Both the position numbers and the translations under genes were made by a program. DNA of 64,000 nucleotides from Laetmonice hystrix. Its lineage: Eukaryota. Position 1 is the first letter of the stretch, and every line of letters starts with the position of its first letter. The notes under the pieces are model-generated. The model had not been told where the DNA came from. It was given only the letters and a program-made list of their open reading frames with translations, and ran no database searches. The stretch lies in contig OZ249450.1 in the NCBI GenBank assembly GCA_965235115.1, positions 15,438,001 to 15,502,000 of the forward strand, in the 5' to 3' direction. Positions 3,201 through 46,967 of this stretch are shown here, in pieces.

Positions 3201-6146
3201 CAGATCACAGATCTTGTGTTTTGATTCGTGTCTTCACTAATACCAGTCAACGACTGGCAACGATATACTCAAAACATACTCAAAACATATGTACAAAACA
3301 TTCCCCAGTCCATCACCCATCTACACTCTCAAACACACCAAATTCCCCACCCATACACGTGGAATACACGTCCTAATAATCTTTATGACGGTGGCTGATG
3401 AGGGAGCCCTAGATGGCAGTGACCGAATGTGGAGTGACCAGCTTCCACAGTTCTCTGACTGACCGCTCCCCTCTCTCCCCACCCCTGGGAGTCATCCATC
3501 ACCGCCAGGCACCACAGGCACGATCATATAGACATCATACAATCATGGTTCTAACAGGGGATCAACATGTCATCGACTGTGTAATGTTTAATACATGCTC
3601 CAGGATGGCGCAGACAGTGGCTGGCTGCACTCTCACTGTCCCTCACAAATTATGGCAACCAATGAGGTTGGGGCCCATAGACCGGCCTTGGTGCCGTCAT
3701 CACGGTTGTTTTGTATGTGGATGATGATGTTTTGATGATATTATCGAGAGGTTCAGCCATACTTGTCAGGGCCGTGTTGGGAAATGCACAGCAATTTTTC
3801 TTACACACAACAATTTTGTACGGCAGTTATATGTTAGGTGGCTGGGAATAATTGGAGAAATTGCTTTATTTTTGCTCGTATTTTTTGCAAAACAAGGGAA
3901 GGAATACTTCACACAGTTTGTAGTGTCTCATTGCAAACTGCGATACCATATCCAACATTGGTTATTTCAATATTATGGACATATGACATTTCCCTCACCC
4001 CCCCCCCCCCCTACTATCCTTATTGATGCCAGATTCCTATTAAGGCGAAACGATACGTTTCGACCTTTGGACTATGAACATGGCAATAAACAGATCAAAC
4101 ACTAAGCCAGCATGCAGCACAATACAGTGGCTGAGAATTCACAGCAAATCATGTATTCAAGAACGTCTCAGGACTGGGTTCCATCTGCTGGTTTGGGGAA
4201 CCCTCTACCCTGCGTCTGATGTAATATGGCATGACGCTTGACGGACACAGAATGTTGGTACCTGACACACACCCAGTCCCGACACTACAGTAAGATCCTG
4301 TATTTAGCAGGAGGAATCCGACTGGTCCCGGTTCATTGCTGTCTGGTCAGTGTTTAGGAGTGGTATGTCCTTTGGATGATCTCTAGGCGTGTCTATGGTG
4401 AACCCAGACAGCCACTTCAAACACGGCGCCACTGTTAAACCCTCCTCTCTCGCTAACCATCTGTCCGTAATGGACATCTTCTAAACTCAAACCCATGGAG
4501 GTCGGTCATGTCTTGCCACTTTTAGTTTTTGGTGAAATATACGCGTATTGCGCTCAAAAGTATCTCGGGCTCATTGATAATGCATTAGTGCAAAACTAGA
4601 AGCTTCAAGATATATACCGCTATCTACGCACAGAGGTTTTCACCAATGAGACATCCGCCGAGTTGAGATAACTGATGACCTCAACTTAACCTTTCTGAAA
4701 ACCTCTTGAGTGATGGTCGTAGAGCCGAATTCGTTCGTGCAATAATGAGAAAGGGGAGGGGGAGGCGGAGCTGCAGCTTCTTCTTTCTTAATGTTATTTT
4801 CAACTGTTTATTTTACCAATATGGTTACTCAATACTTGAACTTTTTAGTTTATGCCAGTTCAGCTTAGCATTTTGCATGTCAAAATCCTCGATTAGATCC
4901 CCATAAAGACATTAATTACGCGCGTATTTTTCCAGTCATTCCTCACTGAAAGAATTCGACTGAACATAATTCGCCCTAGATTATAATAATTAAAATTATT
5001 GGCATTCCATGTCAAAGTAGTGATTTATCCAGGCGATTAGTAAAACTAAAAGATCTTCTGGTACCAAGCACAACTTGAGGCCCTCGAAAACGCCAAGTAT
5101 ATCTGCCAGTATGCAGGGTGGGTTGGTACGCCTGGTTGCCATGGTAGCATGTCTTAGGTCGCCATGCAGAACAATATGTCAGTGGCCGCCATAGCAACAT
5201 GTCCAAGACATGTATCTGGAAGGAGGTCACCAGGACAGGAGGACATCTGACCACTGGCCTGACCCCGCTGGTGGCTGGGACACCTATCTAGGTCACCGCC
5301 CTGGAGGGGGCCGGGTCAGGGGGATAACATGGAAGGGGTTGGATTATGGAAAATGGGTGATGAAGCTTAGAGGAGTGGACTAATCGTTCATTGAGGGGAC
5401 CTATTGGTGGGACTGGGCAGTGGGGACTCCCTAGGTGATTCAGCCAGACTAAGTGAGGACCCAAGGCATCTGAAGTTTAAGTGTCAGCCTAATGAAATCA
5501 ATATGGGAATCGCCTCTCCAGGCACCTGGGACATATGGTGTACTGCTCCCAGCAGCTGGCCCATTATCAAAGCCACACCACGTTTCTACTCATTCCATCC
5601 CTGTAAAATGTTCTACTGGTTCATTTTGATTGTCTCACTACCGTTACAGAACTACTCGAACTGTACTTCGCCTGCACACTTTACATCTGAGAAAAGTAAC
5701 TTGACGATCTATTTGCCTTCCTAATACTTGTGACTTGTCAGCTGTAATCTTTCTCTTCTCACTACTGACTTTGATGTTTCACATCATAGGTAGATATCTT
5801 AACGAAATAACTGGGGGGAAAACCGCGCTACTTTCTTCGGAAGTTCAAGTTCAAGTAAGGCCTCTCAAATATTCTCTCCGTGAACCGGCCATTTCAAGTG
5901 GCTTTTAATGACAGGCTACGTGTTGAGACATGCTATACCTTGGTGTAAGGAGTCAGAATGTGTTTGGCCAACATTTCTCACATTCCTTCCCCTTCCCACC
6001 CATACACACACACATCCTAAACCCCTCCTTCTCTGCCGGTATCTGTGCCCGTCCCGTCTCCTTCTATTGCTCCTTCTACCGTCACTCCTCCCGTCTTCCT
6101 TCCATCCCTCATTTAATCACTCCCACACGACCTTCCCATCACTTAC

Positions 6147-34145: not shown

Positions 34146-37100
34146 ATGAAATTACGATCAGGAGTGAAGACTACGCCCAGTGAAGAGGGTATGGGATCGG
34201 ATAGAGGTGACAAGGCAGCCATGGAGTCCCTGGACCACACTGTGACATTCTTCAGATTCAGGTTCAACTATGTAGTCGTGGTCACCCATTTCAACATTTT
34301 TCTCTATGCATCATGCTTTTTCATACAAATTGGAACATTACCAGTGAGTATATGATAAATTTGAGGCAGTTTTGAACTCAGAAGAATGTCATGAGAAACC
34401 TAATGAAGCCTCCAAAGACATTGCACCGATTTTGTAGCATGATATTTTTTAAATTTTACCATTCTGATTTTTAGCCTTCATGTTGAATGATGGTTTATTG
34501 AGCAGTCTTGATTACATGTGTGCATTGTACATTGAATTACACGAGTACTATAATAATTTCAGTATCTCAGCAAGAAGCTTGGTGTGGATGTCACCATGTT
34601 TGGGTACCTGCAGACAATGTTTGCTGTGGTACAACTGTGCGGAGGTCCCCTCTTTGGTCGTTTTGGGGATCTGTTTGGCGGCCGAGCAGCGTTGACTTTG
34701 GCATTTGCATCTGCAGCATTAAGTTATGGCCTCATGGGATTTGCATACAGTTTTCCAGCACTTTTGTTGTCAAGACTACCTTCCATTTTCATGCATGCAA
34801 TGCAAGGTATGCATTTTATAATTTTCTAGATTTTCTTTCTTGTCAGTGTTTCAGTTCCACTTATATTTCAGTAGAGAAGCCACACATTTTTCTCTACACA
34901 TTTGTTTGGCCTCTGAATATTTTCCCCATGTTTTTTTTTCAGTTTTATTAAATGTAATAGCCAGCATGTATAATCTCTGCGAGATATCATCTAAGTAAAT
35001 GTATTTGATTTTATGGGGACTGTTTCCTACTAGGTGGTCAGATGGTTGTGACAGATTTGACAGATTCCTCACAGCGAGCAGATGCTCTTGGAAAACTGGG
35101 TGTGTCCTATGGTGTTGGCATGGTAGTCGGACCATTTATAGGAGGAATAATTAACACACAATTTGGGTAAGATAGTGTTATCCTAGACAATCATTAAATT
35201 TTTAATCTAAACATTTGAGTAATAGCCTGTATTAGACTTTTTTTTCTGTCTTCATAGTGTCAATTATGAGAGGAGTAAAACTTTGAAAGTGACAAATCAT
35301 GTACTTTGATCATTTACTCTACAAAGTACAATATTAAAATACTGTGCATGCACTGCTGTGTACTAACAGGGAGCACCAGGCAGCCCTCGTGGCGTGTGCA
35401 GGATCATTATTCAGTATGGTTATGGTGAGGCTGACACTCCCCTCCCACACCAAGAAGAGTCCTGTCACAACTGACGATGAAGGTATTAGTTTCAAAGCAA
35501 AAAGATTCCAAAGCTATTTTGTTAAGAAAAGGAATTTTTCTAAAAAGTTGAGTTTCACCATGGGATAATTTGTTGAGGCCCCAATTAATTACTTCTTAGC
35601 AACACAACATGTAAATATTTTGCATTTATAGGGAAATCAAAAACATCTGTCTTCAACTTCAAGAAAATATTCTCCCTCCTGCGGGGCAACCCTCAGGCAT
35701 TAACACTGCTGACCATTAAGACTGTGATAGGTAAGGTTTATAGTCATATACCTTTCTACATATAATTATACCTAAAATGTATAAATTTGTATAAATCAAA
35801 AAGTCTGATTCATCCTAAAATAGGAATCTCTGCAGAGTATGGCCCATCTTACAATTTTTTCTAAGACATCAGAGTAGACGTGTAAAAAATTATTTAATGC
35901 ATTAAGTATTAGGTGTCTCGAGAACAAAACGAGCATTATTTTAATCATAAGTGATATTATTATGTTGTTAACTGAGACTGTGAGTCACAGAGTGTGAGCA
36001 CTGTATCAGCAACATTACTCGGTGCAGATGGTGATAGTTGCTATGATGCTAGGCGTGGCAGTAACCATAATATTTATTTGTTCTGTATCATTAATGAATG
36101 TGAACCAGTAAGAAGGGTGAACTCGTGCAATCCGTAATATACCTTTGATTGCAGGAATACCACTAGGTATTTTCCAAAGCATGTTTAGTATATTTGCCAT
36201 GGAGAAGTTCCGACTGGCAGCCGACCAGAATGGTTACATTATGTCCTACATTGGCATAGTGTCCATGGTGAGTTAGAAACACACCCACTGCATGATGGAC
36301 ACTTGGACTGTGCAAACTTCAACTGTTATCATTTTTGTTTGATCTCTTCCAGTTGTTTGCGTTTTTGTTGTGTTTTCTTCCCCTCAGTTATTTTGATCAT
36401 ATATTTTTACTGCTTTGGTTAAAGGTTCCTAATTTTCGCAGCTTTTTAATGCACGTTGTGTGTTTGATGGCCAGGAATTCCTCTGGGGTTGTGGCAAAGC
36501 ATTATGGGAATGGTCACACTGGAGGTGTTTCAGCTTGAGCCCCACCAGAACGGCTACATCACTTCGTATGTGGGCGTCATGGCCATGGTTAGTCTTACAT
36601 CTACAAATGCTTTGTCAGTAGAAGCCCCAGATTGAAAATTTTAAGGACTTTAGGTACTGAAACTTCTGTTTTACTATTGTCCTTTGTCAGAAATATTACC
36701 AAGCCATGCTTGCTGGAGAAGGTTTTTTTTTCACTCCAAAGAGGATTCCCACCCCTTTGTCATTCTCGGGGGAGCCATCATTAGCACCTAATACTGTGCT
36801 TCAAAATGCATAATTGTAGTAGCACATTAATGTTTAATGCTAGAGCTCTTTCCCATTCTTCATTTCATCAGCAAATTACTAACATTCATTGAGAATGCAA
36901 AAATGTTTTATTATTAATTCAAGTTTTATTAGTTGAATATTTAATTGCTATTTATTTGTTTGAATATTGTGGAAATGCCCCAAGATTAAGAGAGACATTT
37001 ACCAGTATTCGGGCAAGGGCCGGGGGATTGGGGTAACATGATTGAGGCTCTCTCATTTATAAGGCTTGATATTTGAGATTTCCCAATGAGAGATATTGTG

Positions 37101-39791
37101 ATATGAGCCAACATATAAGATGGTGTCTTGATTAACAAGCAATATAGATAATACAAACTTCCTTATTTTACCTGTGGACAATTATTGAAAGTTGGGTGTC
37201 TACTATGTGTTATGTTGACAGGTAGCTCAGAAAGTTGTCCCAGTAGCCTAAATTGTGTGTTCTTTTTCAGTTGATTCAAGGTGTTGGAATAGGTTTGCTG
37301 ACAAAGCGTTTCTCCGAGAATTCCCTGATTAAATGGGCCTCCTTCACATTAATATGGTCTTGGCTACTGATGGTACGTATAGTTAGAGTATTATACCAAT
37401 AGCATTATTTTATCTTATCTGCATTACCTAAACTATGGTCATCTTCATTATTAGCTTCTTGGTATTGGATGCTATCAGTAACTTTCGCCTGACCATAGTC
37501 TTGAGGATTCACGTTGTGAGGAATCAGATAGTGTGCTCCGGGTCGTATGATATGAAGTTTAGCCCAGCCTCCACCAGATGTGATCTGACATGCAGTGGGA
37601 TTTGACTAATTAAAAGAATTACTTTTAGACTTAGCATTATCATTCAAAATGACTGTTAAATTTGTTAAAATATTGGCTGGCTCTACGGTTAATAATATTG
37701 CCTGAGTATGTGGTTGACAATGTTGAACAACCTTCTTCCAGGCATTTGTGCAGAATGTGTGGCAGCTGTGTATAGTGATGCTCCCCAAGGTCTTCGGGCT
37801 TGTCATCATAACAGTAGTTATCAGTAGCAGCATCACCAAGACTGTGCCGAGTGCTGACACTGGTAGGTTATTAAATATGTTCGTTTCCTTCCCCATTATT
37901 AAACCAATTTCGTAGAGTCCTGTAGAATAAACCTCGTATAATATAGAAAGAAAGCTATCTTTGTTAAATAATTAAACCAATGTGTAGAAAAGCTTTATTT
38001 TGATGTTTTATAATTCCAACAAAAAAAGTAAAAATCATGGAAAGAACCATTTTCTGATAGGTAGGCCTAGCATACATGTTCATCAACAGAGGTGCACGCC
38101 AGACTACCCAGTAATATGTTGTTAATTTCTAGCCAGTTGACAGGAGATTGGCCGACTTGTATCTTAATATAAAGTGCTCCAGATATCTTAATTGATCAGT
38201 TTGGTTTTATATCGTACAGAAAGCCAAGTCAAAGCTGGTGGCCACACTTGTTTGTATTTCAGGAACCATGCTTGGTATTAACATGGCTGTCCACTCGCTT
38301 GTAGGCACCTTGTCGCCAACCATTGGTGGCAGAATGATGGCTGAGTATGGTTTCTCCTCAATCAGCTATCTTGGGGCCGTTGCAAGCACTTTGGTCTTTA
38401 TAGCAGTCACACTTCGGCACTTCAACTCATACATTCAGCTGGACGACGAAGCAGATTCTCAGCTTTGCTTGAAAAGTGAGGCGACAGCTTCTTTTCAGGA
38501 TAAGCCCAGTTCTGGAAGTTGTATCGGAGGGAACTGTTGAAATCACACGATTCAGTCTCATTTATTTATAAGGAGAACTAACAAGAACTACATCTTTGCA
38601 GGGGCCATGAGGTTCTAATTATGAACCTCAAAACTGATGAGAAAAGTGTGTAGGAATTAAAATGAAGTACCGTATACAGGAGTATTGTAACATCTGCAAC
38701 GTTGATAAACAGGAATTTAAAAAGGATACCAGCACATGGGACTCCTTTGTTGCGGAAAGCATTGAAGTTGTGGGAAGACAATGTCATGATAACCCCAGTC
38801 AAGTACTGTGTACTTTTATTCCTCTGTCAGTAAGTGACATCTCTATGCGGAACTAAAACATGGCAGAAAGGTTTCTCTCTCCTATCATTATTGTCCCTGA
38901 CTCTCATTATTTCATTTTGTTTCAGGTATATTTCGTTTTTCTGTTGCTTGAGATTCTTTGTAACTGTGCTGCATTATTGTGATAGTTTACCGAATTAATA
39001 CAATATCTGTATTAATTCAAAAGGGCATCTGATTTATCCAAAAAGGACGCATTTTTGCCCAATACTGCTGATTCCTTTTAGCAACATCTAATGCTGCCCC
39101 CTGGTGGCCAAAGTCGACGGCCTGTAAGTCATTTATCATGGGAGCTCTCACCGTGGTTAAGGATGTTCATGATACATGTGCCATGATATTTTCCTTACTG
39201 TCATTGATTTTTATTGCATGGGTTTTGTATATGGATCACCTGATTTGAATAGCTCAGTATTTCTCAGATTGTACATGTATTCCTGTCAGTGTATGTGTAT
39301 CTTCCAAGACTTGCGTCATTCAATAACTTTTTTTTTTTTGAAGTCCTATATACCGTACAGGGGACAATCTGCTAGACTGTATCAAGATTAGTTTTAAGAG
39401 GATTCCCCGACGTATAAGTATCCCATTTTATTATTTGGGACCTGCATGCTGCCGTATTATTTAGTAATTCGACGAGGGCTCCCTAGTCGACCGCCTCAAA
39501 ATTCAATCAAATTTTTGCATGCCAGTATATAAATGAGGACTTCAATCTTTGCTACATTTAATTTTGTATATTGCGATTTCTATTGACATGTACATTTATC
39601 TAGCTTTTGCCGTTGGTGTGATAGGTGCGATGCTCGGAATCAACATGGCTGTCAACTCTATGATCCGCACCGTCTCGCCGACAATCGGTGGGCTCATGCT
39701 CCAACATCTCGGATTCTCTTCCTTTGGTTATTTTGGATGTGTTACCGGCATTGTTGTAACGTCTTATCTCTTCAGCAAGGTCAATGATTAA
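34146..39791 (+). CDS. SLC22A18: SLC22A18-like major facilitator superfamily transporter with alternative exons
   Basis: Exons 34146-34343, 34563-34806, 35034-35166, 35370-35482, 35632-35730, [36155-36267 or 36475-36587], 37271-37372, 37742-37862, [38263-38540 or 39625-39791]. Motifs FGYLQT.F.VVQLCGGPLFGRFGDLFG.RAAL (MFS motif A), SRLPSIFMHAMQGGQMVVTDL, RADALGKLGVSYGVGMVVGP and DTG.MLG match the SLC22A18 family. Confidence 0.9.
36155..36267 (+). CDS. SLC22A18: SLC22A18-like mutually exclusive exon, copy A
   Basis: 113 nt, phase 1 to 0, gattgcag|..ATG|gtgagt; (G)IPLGIFQSMFSIFAMEKFRLAADQNGYIMSYIGIVSM. Confidence 0.9.
36475..36587 (+). CDS. SLC22A18: SLC22A18-like mutually exclusive exon, copy B
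   Basis: 113 nt, phase 1 to 0, atggccag|..ATG|gttagt; (G)IPLGLWQSIMGMVTLEVFQLEPHQNGYITSYVGVMAM, 19/38 identical to copy A. Confidence 0.82.
38263..38540 (+). CDS. SLC22A18: SLC22A18-like alternative last exon, copy A (long tail)
   Basis: ttgtatttcag| phase 1; (G)TMLGINMAVHSLVGTLSPTIGGRMMAEYGFSSISYLG...GSCIGGNC-stop. Confidence 0.85.
39092..39110 (-). promoter_or_regulatory. Near-consensus CTCF site between the two alternative last exons
   Basis: The reverse complement reads TGGCCACCAGGGGGCAGCA. Confidence 0.55.
39625..39791 (+). CDS. SLC22A18: SLC22A18-like alternative last exon, copy B (short tail)
   Basis: ggtgtgatag| phase 1; (G)AMLGINMAVNSMIRTVSPTIGGLMLQHLGFSSFGYFG...FSKVND-stop. Confidence 0.85.
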
Positions 39792-44300: not shown

Positions 44301-46967
44301 AACATGGTAGATGGCCTGAAATTTGGTAGTCGAGAATGAAAAGTATCAAGATTCCTAGTCCCAAACCTTACCCATGCCTCTATTTTAGGTCCCTATAAAG
44401 ATTATTTGTATAACAATAAAGATTTTCTTACCGTAAACATTTTTTTTGCTTCTTGATGTGAGCGCATCGCCTGGTATCTGACGCCGAGCTCCTTCTTCAG
44501 ATCAAGGTCGTGTGGATATTTCTCTAACAGTTTCTTCAACGTGTTCATAGCCTGGTGGTTCCAACCTGCCAGAGAATCAAAGCAGGCCACATACTGGAAG
44601 ACACCTTTTTTGTTTCCTAAATTCATACACAACCTCCTGACTGCTATAACCATGACAACAGTTATACCTATCACCCTGCTTACTACTGTAACTATGGCAA
44701 CCGCCATACCTATCACCCTGTTGACTACTGTATATAACTAGCTATAGATCTACACAGCTTTCTGCTGTCCATGACACCACGCCACTCACGCATGAAGAAC
44801 TGTTTGGCGGATGCTTCTCTCCCGGCCTTCATGTAGAGCTCTTTAGGGACTTCATTCATTTCGAGCACCTTCAAGAAATCATCGATGGCCTTGGTCATCA
44901 GAGAATTGCTCCTCTGTTTCTCAGCCAGTTGGCTGAGAGTCTGGGCTTTCCCATAGTACGCGCGGGGAGACTCGCTGACGTGTGTCAGAATGTGGGTGTA
45001 GGCATTCAACGCATCCTGGAACTCGCCCTGAAATGTACCCCAACCATCCAGCATGTGTTTATCAAAAGATGGCAACTTAATCCTTTGGTGCTATAGGAAT
45101 GAAAGACTGTGGGCCTGCTATAACAGTAGCGTACCCAGGCGGGGGGGGGGGGGGGTGGCTTGGGGTGCTCAAGCACCCCCCTCAATTCGCCTCCCAATTT
45201 GCAGCGCCTACGACGTTGGTTATTTCCAGCACCCCCTGGGTCCAGTTTCTGGGTACGCCACTGTATAATATTGTAAAATATGTCATTCAGTCATGGTAAT
45301 CAGAGGAACTTAATACAAGGATATAGGCCTACCAAGAGTTCGAGTAGGCCCTTTATATATGAACCATGCATGTGTCCAAAGGCCAGGAAATTTACACATT
45401 AAATATTATTCACCTTATCAAACAAGTCATCTGCTTTGTCTAGGTGATCTTGAATCTTACGGTCTGCCTGGTTAGTGATGGATGACCTCGAGGGTTTTTT
45501 GAGGACATTGTTGGAGTCTTTTGTCTCCTGGGTGACCTTGTCGCCCTGAGATTCTGCGGGTTCATTGCTGCCACCTGGTGGCTGAGACCCTTGGTCCTCA
45601 GCAGTTGACTTGGGATCCCTAATACCTTGTGAGGCAGAGTCCCGGGGTGGGTGTGTTTTAATGAGCCCACCAGCCTTTGAATAGCCCATCACAGTTGCTA
45701 TGCGAGTTTGTATCAAATCTGAATGAAAAGAAAATTGTTTCTTAGCGTTTCAATTAGTCACTTTATCTTTGAAAGTGTAAGTTCACAACGAGCATGAGAC
45801 TGGAAACTCGGGCAAAACGGGAAAGTGCATCATCTGAGTGTATTGAAGCGTTGAGGTAGGCCCTATACCATTATAAACTTAGATACATGTACTGACCTAT
45901 TGCTTGAGGCACATCTACAAAGTTATAGACGTAGACTGCACCAGCAAGGTAGAGAACCAGAAGCAGTAGTAGACCATACACTGTCGTACTCCAACTTGAA
46001 CTTGACGTAGGTGTGGATCCCACACGACTGGACTTCTTCTTTACCGTCTTTACTCCATTGACTGGAAGCAGAAAATCACTTTACGAAGACATTCCTCAAT
46101 AATATTACACTAGGCCTACTGGTTTAGTATAGTGTGGGATGCTGTATGGATTTATGTTGTTTCTAGACAATTAGCAAACGTCCTTCCGTCTGAGACGACT
46201 TGTTACATGTGTGCAATGCTTCCCCAAGACAGAACTCCAGGTTAAAACGTTACAGAACGTTCTAGAAATAATACCCTGTGGGTTGGAGTTATTCCTGACT
46301 GAGAAATGTATGAAGCGATCATGTTAGCCGCGAGTGAAAGTATTTAGTATAGTGTCCAGATTAAAACCATTTTCCTCAACGGTTCAATGTTTGCAATATT
46401 CTATTTATGATCTCAAGGCTTTATTGCCAAGTCTGTGGGAACTCTACCTGTACGAATGGNNNNNNNNNNNNNNNNNNNNNNNNNNNNNNNNNNNNNNNNN
46501 NNNNNNNNNNNNNNNNNNNNNNNNNNNNNNNNNNNNNNNNNNNNNNNNNNNNNNNNNNNNNNNNNNNNNNNNNNNNNNNNNNNNNNNNNNNNNNNNNNNN
46601 NNNGTATAATGTCCATGTCTCTTTCATTAGCATAGTGAGTGTTGATTGACATTAATTTATTCAGGCCTAATTAAGCCTGCACTAGCTGTACTGTCGGCCA
46701 TCTCTAATGTGGCCCATGTCACACTGGTAACTGCAGATTCAAACAGTGAGTAAAAATACCATTTTTCAAACAACTTTCAGAGCATTTTCAAAACAAACAG
46801 CACTGTAATCTAATTACCGCACTGTAAGACATAACATTTATCAATTTTATAAATAATCCAATGACTCACATATTGTAAGGCAGTGTCAGTGAGTTTGGGG
46901 TGCCTGTATACGTACCTGGTTTCGGGCTAGTTTCGGTCCCTCTGTGGCACCGTTTCCGTGCCCCCAT
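41396..46967 (-). CDS. ASPH: Aspartyl/asparaginyl beta-hydroxylase (type II ER membrane, TPR plus 2OG-Fe oxygenase)
   Basis: Exons 46916-46967, 45897-46061 (transmembrane), 45414-45718, 44790-45027, 44432-44565, 44053-44250 (GC donor), 43579-43716, 43178-43313, 42991-43082, 42425-42555 and 41396-41663, all phase-compatible. Motifs SPRAYYGKAQ, LEENWMLIRDEGLA, GRGQIKFSVMHPG.H.WPHCGPTN.R.R.HLGL and FDDSFEHEVWH...RLVLIIDMWHP. Confidence 0.96.
41955..42136. mobile_element. PIF/Harbinger-like MITE (182 bp)
   Basis: TIR AGGCCGGTTTATAGTCCGTCGGCCGACCATCGG; 3-bp TSD GTA (41952-41954 and 42137-42139); internal (GGCCGACCATC)n subrepeats. Confidence 0.88.
42675..42945. mobile_element. Palindromic MITE (about 270 bp) in an ASPH intron
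   Basis: Long imperfect inverted arms CCTGGGCC(C)GTTTTT..TTTTCCACCGTGAGCAAGGGTGAGCTGAGCTGAGCAA; no clear TSD. Confidence 0.8.
45124..45263. mobile_element. MITE (140 bp) with TIR CAGT(A/G)GCGTACCCAG
   Basis: 15-bp TIR with one mismatch; TATAA repeated on both flanks; G-run core. Resembles the element at 40111. Confidence 0.85.
46460..46603. other. Assembly gap (144 N) in the intron between the first two coding exons of ASPH
   Basis: Run of N; the ORF-track entries spanning it are artefacts. Confidence 1.

What the first reader, a model, noticed from the sequence alone, without database searches (positions are those of the whole stretch)
36155..36587. Tandem-duplicated, frame-locked mutually exclusive exons in the SLC22A18-like transporter
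Two exons of exactly 113 nt, 207 nt apart, have the same phases (1 to 0), intact splice sites, no stops and 50% amino-acid identity. Including both or neither shifts the frame, so only one-or-other mRNAs encode a full protein. The segment corresponds to TM7-TM8; TM7 lines the MFS substrate cavity, and the differences (IF/LW, FSIFAM/MGMVTL) fall there. Copy A is closer to human SLC22A18. I know of no such switch described for this family.
Basis: partly seen in the sequence, partly recalled or inferred. Interest (0 to 1): 0.8.

Follow-up and report, generated by a model that had tools for sequence, protein, structure and literature searches.

The report
Conserved alternative exon pair in SLC22A18-like transporter
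A polychaete worm's single SLC22A18-type membrane transporter gene carries two old versions of the exon that builds part of its substrate cavity, both kept by selection, so it can probably make two transporter variants; the only RNA data show just the first version in use, and this kind of either/or exon pair is well known.

Summary
Exons A (36155-36267) and B (36475-36587) are both 113 nt, have AG/GT sites and the same phase, and are clearly homologous (71/113 nt, 18/37 aa). The gene is the single-copy SLC22A18 (SLC67A1) orthologue of an annelid, not a vertebrate.

B is not a decaying copy:
- A second, distant species (synonymous sites saturated, introns unalignable) has the same A-B tandem with intact splice sites.
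- B's dN/dS between the two species is about 0.11.
- Twelve A-versus-B differences are fixed in both species.

Owenia, Capitella and three other metazoan loci have only the A-type exon.

The exon encodes the outer half of TM7, the TM7-TM8 loop and the start of TM8. Its invariant Gln aligns with the pocket residue Glu222 of NorA.

Including both exons or neither gives a premature stop. The 207-nt intron rules out steric exclusion.

The one RNA-derived data set of this species holds a spliced contig E5-A-E7 and nothing on B. Use of B, and strict mutual exclusivity, are therefore inferred, not shown.

Verdict: a new member of a well-known kind (tandem-duplicated mutually exclusive exons). I found no paper reporting it for this family. 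The scan noted many similar exon pairs elsewhere in this genome.

The parts
34146..39791 (+). SLC22A18/SLC67A1-like MFS transporter gene. Coding exons: E1 34146-34343, E2 34563-34806, E3 35034-35166, E4 35370-35482, E5 35632-35730, 6A, 6B, E7, E8 37742-37862, and the last exon 9a (38263-38540) or 9b (39625-39791).
   Evidence: tblastn with Owenia, Capitella and Mya orthologues. Eight GT..AG joints in one 1278-nt RNA-derived contig. Complete 429-aa ORF.
35632..35730 (+). Upstream constitutive exon E5 (start of TM7). It ends in phase 1.
   Evidence: Joint 35730>36155 in the X4 contig. Conserved in L001 and L007.
36155..36267 (+). Exon 6A, 113 nt, the default version (IPLGIFQSMFSIFAMEKFRLAADQNGYIMSYIGIVSM): TM7 C-terminal half, loop, TM8 N-terminal half.
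   Evidence: Spliced E5-A-E7 in RNA-derived contig 25, depth 95. 34/37 aa identical in species 2, dN 0.066. Family-typical FQSMFS motif.
36268..36474 (+). Intron between A and B, 207 nt. It is of normal size for this gene, with U2-type GT..AG ends.
   Evidence: The other introns of the gene are 149-424 nt. It is 1.5-2.3 kb in species 2, so there is no steric block to A-B splicing.
36475..36587 (+). Exon 6B, 113 nt, the alternative version (IPLGLWQSIMGMVTLEVFQLEPHQNGYITSYVGVMAM). Its donor GTTAGT is weaker than A's GTGAGT.
   Evidence: Intact AG/GT and open frame. Its orthologue in species 2 is 29/37 aa identical, with dN 0.132 and dS 1.21 and Fisher p=1.3e-5. It is the only alignable sequence between unalignable introns. 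X4 RNA depth on it is zero.
37271..37372 (+). Downstream constitutive exon E7 (rest of TM8, TM8-TM9 loop motif, TM9). It starts in phase 0.
   Evidence: Joint 36267>37271. Conserved in L001 and L007.

Best explanation
Exons 6A and 6B are an old tandem duplication inside the single SLC22A18/SLC67A1-type MFS transporter gene of a polychaete. Each encodes the outer half of TM7, the TM7-TM8 loop and the first half of TM8. This hairpin carries pocket-lining positions of the C-domain. A is the default exon. B is a protein-coding substitute kept by selection, most likely spliced in instead of A in a minor isoform restricted by tissue, stage or condition, giving a transporter with an altered cavity wall (GLWQSIMGMV in place of GIFQSMFSIF). 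Nothing physical prevents A-B splicing. Exclusivity is enforced because 113 is not divisible by 3, so A+B or neither gives a premature stop and presumably nonsense-mediated decay. Splice-site competition may add to this, since B has the weaker donor in both species. Shown: the anatomy, the homology, the frame logic, the A-containing mRNA, conservation and purifying selection on B, and the lineage restriction. Inferred: that B is spliced in, that it replaces A, and that it changes substrate handling.
For: - Homology and frame.
- Codon-position identity between A and B of 65/86/35 % means both copies stayed under coding constraint long after third positions saturated.
- Species 2 (L001, and its second haplotype L007) has A, B and E7 at 113/113/102 nt with AG/GT sites. 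B has dN/dS of about 0.11; A has dN 0.066.
- Between the two species only the exons align (B 78 %, A 77 %, E7 77 %); the introns do not.
- Twelve A/B differences are fixed in both species, and 14 positions are shared.
- Internal control: a partial third B-like copy in species 2 is truncated and has lost its acceptor in one haplotype, whereas B has not decayed.
- The gene is single-copy, and B matches only itself and A in the 627-Mb genome.
- TM mapping: the AlphaFold model of the Owenia orthologue (pLDDT 88) places the exon at residues 270-306, that is TM7 258-286, loop, TM8 291-319.
- The closest solved structure is NorA. Exon position 7 (Gln, in both A and B) aligns with top posterior probability to NorA residue 222. 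NorA Leu218, Ile244 and Ala252, named as pocket residues in PMC11130294, also fall within the exon.
- Hatje et al. report that about 60 % of human MXE clusters have lengths not divisible by 3, and that clusters usually consist of one ubiquitous exon plus regulated, lower-expressed exons (PMC5740500). This fits A expressed and B unseen.
Against: - No RNA evidence for B. In the only RNA-derived run (X4, same sample, Logan contigs) the gene is covered at depth about 95 with E5-A-E7, and depth on B is 0, although contigs of depth 4-11 elsewhere in the gene were kept. Contigs can drop rare variants, and the tissue is unknown.
- No B-containing protein or transcript was found among 150 representative hits or 120 full-length family members.
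- Conservation rests on one other species (two haplotypes). A closer third species (P0269) could not be read.
- B evolves about twice as fast as A.
- No conserved intronic docking or selector pairing was found.
Confidence: 0.7

Rival explanations
1. B is a silent relic: a duplicated exon that is no longer spliced into any productive mRNA in this species. It looks intact by chance or because of recent loss of use.
For: Zero RNA depth on B while A is at depth about 95. No B-type protein in any database hit. B evolves faster than A.
Against: Synonymous sites between the two species are saturated and the introns are unalignable. Even so, B keeps its length, frame, both splice sites and 78 % identity, with dN/dS about 0.11. 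The truly unused partial copy in species 2 has decayed. Between A and B, second codon positions are 86 % identical while third positions are 35 % identical.
Confidence: 0.13
2. B acts as a poison exon. It is included after A to shift the frame and trigger NMD, tuning transporter level rather than making a second protein.
For: A+B gives a premature stop at codon 338, upstream of two more junctions. The 207-nt intron allows A-B splicing. Joined MXE reads are common in validated NMD-type clusters (PMC5740500).
Against: A poison exon needs no protein-level similarity to A. B's substitutions between species fall 8/2/15 on codon positions 1/2/3 in the A-equivalent frame. B keeps 14 residues shared with A and with the family motif QNGY..SY.G. 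This pattern is that of a translated exon in the substitution frame. The two roles are not exclusive.
Confidence: 0.08
3. Assembly artefact: a collapsed paralogue or haplotype placed in tandem.
For: None found.
Against: Contigs assembled independently from three DNA runs span A-intron-B-E7 colinearly (records 2, 10, 18). The same tandem order occurs on two contigs of another species' assembly. There is no other B-like locus in the genome. A and B are only 63 % identical, far below haplotype divergence.
Confidence: 0.01

Closest known systems
Tandem-duplicated mutually exclusive exons in general (Letunic/Kondrashov-type exon duplications; human MXE landscape, PMC5740500; tandem duplicated exon substitutions, PMC9741552, PMC8373072)
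   Same: Adjacent homologous exons of equal length and phase inside a folded domain of a membrane protein. Length is not divisible by 3, so joint inclusion or skipping gives NMD targets. One default exon plus one apparently regulated exon. Both copies are conserved between species.
   Different: This family (SLC22A18/SLC67A1) is not in the papers I read or found. The event is lineage-restricted within annelids rather than ancient. Expression of the second exon has not been shown.
COQ-2 exon 6a/6e switch in nematodes, platyhelminths, annelids and molluscs (PMC7434440)
   Same: A mutually exclusive pair of homologous exons in a polytopic membrane protein that swaps residues at the substrate site. 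It is present in lophotrochozoans and restricted to certain lineages.
   Different: COQ-2 is a prenyltransferase, not an MFS carrier. There the two isoforms and their substrate consequence (ubiquinone versus rhodoquinone) are shown experimentally. Here neither is.
Carrier genes with MXE pairs: SLC25A3 exon 3A/3B and SLC39A14 4A/4B (cited in PMC5740500); SLC7A2 CAT-2A/2B and Drosophila/C. elegans MRP (the first from my own knowledge, the latter in PMC9741552)
   Same: A solute carrier whose transmembrane or loop segment is exchanged by either/or splicing to give isoforms with different kinetics or tissue distribution.
   Different: Different folds or families. None is a DHA1-like MFS transporter, and none swaps the TM7-TM8 hairpin.
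NorA / DHA1-type MFS drug:proton antiporters (PDB 7LO8, 8TTE; PMC11130294), also MFSD10 and VMAT
   Same: Best sequence and fold matches of the family. TM7 carries a central pocket residue at the position of the exon's invariant Gln.
   Different: NorA has Glu222 as a protonation site, whereas the animal family has Gln. About 20 % identity. The comparison is used only to map the exon onto the fold.

Membership tests
Tandem-duplicated mutually exclusive exon (MXE) cluster | Neighbouring exons in one gene, same strand, with no other exon between them | tested here: met
   A 36155-36267 and B 36475-36587 lie between E5 and E7.
Tandem-duplicated mutually exclusive exon (MXE) cluster | Similar length, identical splice phases, canonical splice sites on both | tested here: met
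   Both exons are 113 nt, phase 1 to 0, with AG/GT. The same holds in species 2.
Tandem-duplicated mutually exclusive exon (MXE) cluster | Significant sequence homology between the exons | tested here: met
   71/113 nt, 8.7 sd above the window background. 18/37 aa.
Tandem-duplicated mutually exclusive exon (MXE) cluster | Joint inclusion or joint skipping is incompatible with a full protein | tested here: met
   Stops at codon 338 (both) and codon 282 (neither).
Tandem-duplicated mutually exclusive exon (MXE) cluster | Transcripts exist with each exon alone, and none (or only NMD substrates) with both | tested here: inconclusive
   The A-only transcript is shown. B has zero depth in the single RNA-derived run, which consists of contigs from one sample.
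Tandem-duplicated mutually exclusive exon (MXE) cluster | Both copies conserved as coding sequence in other species | tested here: met
   In L001 and L007, B has dN/dS about 0.11 and A has dN 0.066. Only one other species was available.
SLC22A18 / SLC67A1 orthologue (DHA1-like MFS) | Best matches are proteins named SLC22A18 across Metazoa, full length | tested here: met
   The 429-aa product is 61 % identical to the Owenia protein and 52-64 % to mollusc 'solute carrier family 22 member 18-like' proteins.
SLC22A18 / SLC67A1 orthologue (DHA1-like MFS) | MFS_1 domain with a 12-TM fold | tested here: met
   PF07690 is on all homologues. The AlphaFold model of the Owenia orthologue has 12 TM helices, pLDDT 88. 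Top fold hits are NorA, MFSD10 and VMAT. Single 37-aa exons alone give no Pfam hit.
SLC22A18 / SLC67A1 orthologue (DHA1-like MFS) | Single orthologous locus in the genome | tested here: met
   All strong exon matches lie on C20 at the window. Only weak paralogues (40 % and 24 %) lie elsewhere.
SLC22A18 / SLC67A1 orthologue (DHA1-like MFS) | Transport activity or substrate | not testable with these tools
The substrate of the animal family is poorly defined (my own knowledge).
Poison (NMD-inducing) exon | Conservation without codon periodicity or protein similarity | tested here: not met
   B's interspecies differences are 8/2/15 by codon position, and it shares the family motif with A.

The most novel reading that the evidence does not exclude
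The gene carries two independent duplicated modules: the TM7-TM8 exon (A/B) and the TM11-TM12 last exon (9a/9b). Both are conserved in the second species. For each, the only spliced mRNA contig of the one RNA sample uses a single version (A and 9b). If B and 9a are chosen together, one gene would encode two matched C-domains, in effect two transporters with different cavities, through coordinated choice at two distant splice sites. That would be unusual for an MFS carrier.
Probability: 0.12. Interest if true: 0.6.

Novelty: new member of a known kind. Interest (0 to 1): 0.35.

Why it matters
SLC22A18/SLC67A1 is a poorly understood orphan-like MFS carrier. A natural pair of selected variants of the TM7-TM8 hairpin points to the residues beside the pocket Gln that tune its function. 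It also offers a ready-made comparison for transport assays. More broadly, it adds an MFS example to the rule that tandem exon substitutions concentrate in membrane transport proteins, and it documents a lineage-specific, fairly old origin within annelids. It does not reveal a new mechanism.

Tried and rejected
- RNA search. Two run searches found no run recorded as RNA. X4, a small run of the same sample, turned out to hold spliced contigs. It supports A only, and B use could not be shown.
- The search for homologous proteins with the B exon. The 55-aa open frame found no candidate.
- Profile search with A+B against 1.84 billion representatives. There were 183 hits, and all but one of the 150 listed were A-type. 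The one B-type hit (P0037) led to species 2.
- A closer relative (P0269, 93 % in E2) and P0293 could not be read because the sample files are too large.
- Conserved intronic docking or selector elements. None was found, because the introns do not align. A 17-nt, 76 % complementary pair flanking the A-B intron (36277-36293 / 36449-36465) is weak, has no counterpart in species 2, and is not used as evidence.
- Steric hindrance and U12/U2 incompatibility as exclusivity mechanisms. Both are rejected: the intron is 207 nt here and 1.5-2.3 kb in species 2, and all sites are GT-AG U2-type.
- Pfam on single exons gave no hits, as they are too short.
- I did not fold the two spliced isoforms. A spliced product is not a contiguous reference, and I did not type long sequences. 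The Owenia orthologue was folded instead.
- Complex prediction was not used, as it is not relevant here.

Full report
**Observation**

- Exon A (36155-36267) and exon B (36475-36587) are each 113 nt. Each is preceded by AG and followed by GT (A...ttgcag|GA...ATG|gtgagt; B...ggccag|GA...ATG|gttagt). Both are open in the same frame and separated by 207 nt.
- They match at 71/113 nt. The best other ungapped match to A on either strand of the window is 52, against a background of 28.9 +/- 4.8.
- The peptides share 18/37 residues.
- Identity by codon position is 65 %, 86 % and 35 %. Third positions are essentially randomised while second positions are kept. This can only happen if both copies stayed under coding constraint for most of the time since the duplication.

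**What the gene is**

- A profile of A+B against 1.84 billion representative proteins gave 183 significant hits, all MFS proteins or genomic ORF fragments of one family.
- A full-length hit (Mya arenaria) retrieved 560 relatives, named 'solute carrier family 22 member 18(-like)', 'organic cation transporter-like protein 2' or, in newer records, 'solute carrier family 67 member A1'. They range from sponges and cnidarians to vertebrates.
- tblastn plus the RNA joints give a ten-exon gene on the + strand from 34146 to 39791. It encodes 429 aa.
- The product is 61 % identical to the Owenia fusiformis protein and 52 % to the Capitella protein.
- Earlier notes of this scan call the genome a polychaete. 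That fits, and the gene is not vertebrate.
- In the 627-Mb assembly the gene is single-copy. B matches only itself and A.

**Is the arrangement real?**

- Contigs assembled independently from three DNA runs of the sample span A, the intron, B and E7 colinearly (records 2, 10, 18).
- This, together with the second species below, excludes a mis-assembled paralogue or haplotype.

**RNA evidence**

- No run is recorded as RNA.
- A small run of the same sample (X4) contains a 1278-nt contig with eight GT..AG joints, so it is RNA-derived.
- That contig joins 35730>36155 and 36267>37271, which is E5-A-E7, skipping 1003 nt that include B. It then joins E8 to the distal last exon 9b.
- X4 depth on the two bins covering B is zero. 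The main contig has depth about 95, and contigs of depth 4-11 were kept elsewhere in the gene.
- A is therefore the expressed default. B is absent or rare in that sample. These are contigs from one sample, so they can show presence, not absence.

**Conservation**

- The only clearly B-type hit among the 150 listed (P0037) lies on a 6.6-Mb contig of another assembly (L001).
- That locus has A (2574-2686), B (4972-5084) and E7 (5713-5814), again 113/113/102 nt with AG/GT.
- A second contig of the same assembly (L007) is 93-98 % identical and probably the other haplotype. It carries the whole gene with the same order, and both last exons.
- Between the window and this species only the exons align (B 78 %, A 77 %, E7 77 %, E5 71 %). 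The introns do not align.
- Nei-Gojobori estimates:

| Exon | dN | dS |
|---|---|---|
| A | 0.066 | saturated |
| E7 | 0.053 | saturated |
| B | 0.132 | 1.21 |

- B's ratio is about 0.11. Synonymous versus non-synonymous change in B gives Fisher p = 1.3e-5.
- Twelve positions differ between A and B yet are fixed within each type in both species (I/L5, F/W6, M/I9, F/M10, S/G11, F/V13, R/Q19, A/E21, A/P22, D/H23, I/V32, S/A36). Fourteen positions are invariant in all four.
- Species 2 supplies a control. A partial third B-like copy 160 nt upstream of B is truncated after 22 codons, and in one haplotype it has lost its acceptor and its Trp. An unused copy decays; B has not.
- B has a pyrimidine at donor position +3 in both species (GTTAGT, GTCAGT), against GTGAGT for A. 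This is a weaker site, as expected of a regulated exon (inference).

**Distribution**

- The genomic loci of Owenia and Capitella, and three more distant metazoan loci, have one A-type exon. Nothing else in the A-E7 interval scores above shuffled background. In Capitella that intron is only 58 nt.
- None of 120 full-length family members carries a B-type segment.
- The duplication is therefore older than the split of the two species that have it (synonymous sites saturated). It is absent from, or lost in, the two other annelid lineages sampled.
- B keeps ancestral states in the loop and TM8 half (P22, V32, as in Owenia and Capitella). A keeps the ancestral TM7 motif GIFQSMFS.
- A 37-residue segment cannot date the event more finely.

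**Where the exon sits**

- An AlphaFold model of the Owenia orthologue (43-sequence alignment, pLDDT 88, pTM 0.86) has 12 TM helices.
- The exon equals residues 270-306. That is the last 17 residues of TM7 (258-286), a four-residue loop, and the first 16 residues of TM8 (291-319).
- The closest solved relative by sequence profile and by fold is the DHA1 antiporter NorA, followed by MFSD10 and VMAT.
- In the profile alignment the nearly universal Gln of the FQSMFS motif (exon position 7, kept in both A and B) pairs with NorA residue 222 at top posterior probability.
- In NorA that residue is Glu222. It is buried in the substrate pocket and is one of the two essential protonation sites. Leu218 (TM7), Ile244 and Ala252 (TM8) are listed as pocket residues (PMC11130294). 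They align to exon positions 3, 29 and 37.
- A and B agree at positions 3, 7 and 37 and differ at 29 (M/T).
- The fixed A/B differences cluster immediately around and one to two turns outward of the Gln (positions 5, 6, 9-11, 13).
- That B re-lines part of the cavity while keeping its central residue is a reasonable inference. It rests on a 20 %-identity alignment and no coordinates.

**Mechanism of exclusivity**

- The A-B intron is 207 nt here and 1.5-2.3 kb in species 2. All sites are U2-type.
- Steric hindrance and spliceosome incompatibility are therefore out.
- No conserved complementary intronic elements were found.
- What remains is the reading frame. A+B stops at codon 338 and neither stops at codon 282, both upstream of further junctions.
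- This is the commonest situation in validated MXE clusters. Such clusters also typically have one ubiquitous exon and one regulated, lower-expressed exon (PMC5740500).

**Comparison and novelty**

- Either/or splicing of tandem duplicated exons is well described and is enriched in membrane transport proteins (PMC9741552).
- Functional analogues include the COQ-2 6a/6e switch of helminths, annelids and molluscs (PMC7434440) and SLC25A3 (PMC5740500).
- Searches combining SLC22A18, major facilitator superfamily or annelid with mutually exclusive exons found no description of this pair.
- The same scan has already noted at least 13 similar exon pairs in this genome.
- I therefore class it as a new member of a known kind. 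The evolutionary evidence for function is good, and expression of the second exon remains unproven.

Noticed in passing
window 38263-38540 and 39625-39791: Two homologous alternative last exons, 9a and 9b (TM11-TM12). Both fit the phase of E8. 9a gives a 466-aa product and 9b a 429-aa product. Both are conserved in species 2 (37/48 and 36/49 aa). The X4 RNA contig uses 9b. Low-depth X4 contigs (4-11) cover 38453-39199, which is the end of 9a and beyond, but not its first 190 nt. This is the separate first-stage note s1-356022.
   Followed up: partly
L001:4813-4878 and L007:9813-9878: A truncated third B-like copy about 160 nt upstream of B in species 2. It has 22 codons and then diverges. In one haplotype the acceptor AG has become AA and the Trp codon is lost. 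It serves as a decaying control copy.
   Followed up: yes
protein P0001: A genomic ORF fragment from another, mollusc-like assembly shows two extra partial copies of the 5' end of the same exon (…PIGIFQSMFSV / FPISVFQSMFSIL / IPIGVFQSMFSVV…). The start of this exon seems prone to local tandem duplication.
   Followed up: no
L002:12415-12609, L004:17116-17310: In two distant metazoan loci E5 and the A-type exon are contiguous, with no intron between them. The annelids and the mollusc-like locus have the intron.
   Followed up: no
window 36277-36293 and 36449-36465: A 17-nt, 76 % complementary pair sits just inside both ends of the A-B intron. It is weak and was not found in species 2. It is probably chance.
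   Followed up: partly
window 35370-35482: Exon E4 is also exactly 113 nt but is not homologous to A or B. This is a coincidence of length.
   Followed up: yes
window 46460-46603: A run of 144 N (gap or masked).
   Followed up: no
window 37694, 38054-38093: Haplotype-type differences in the DNA contigs (a 10-nt insertion and a 38-nt deletion) lie in introns. No variant was reported inside exon A or exon B.
   Followed up: no
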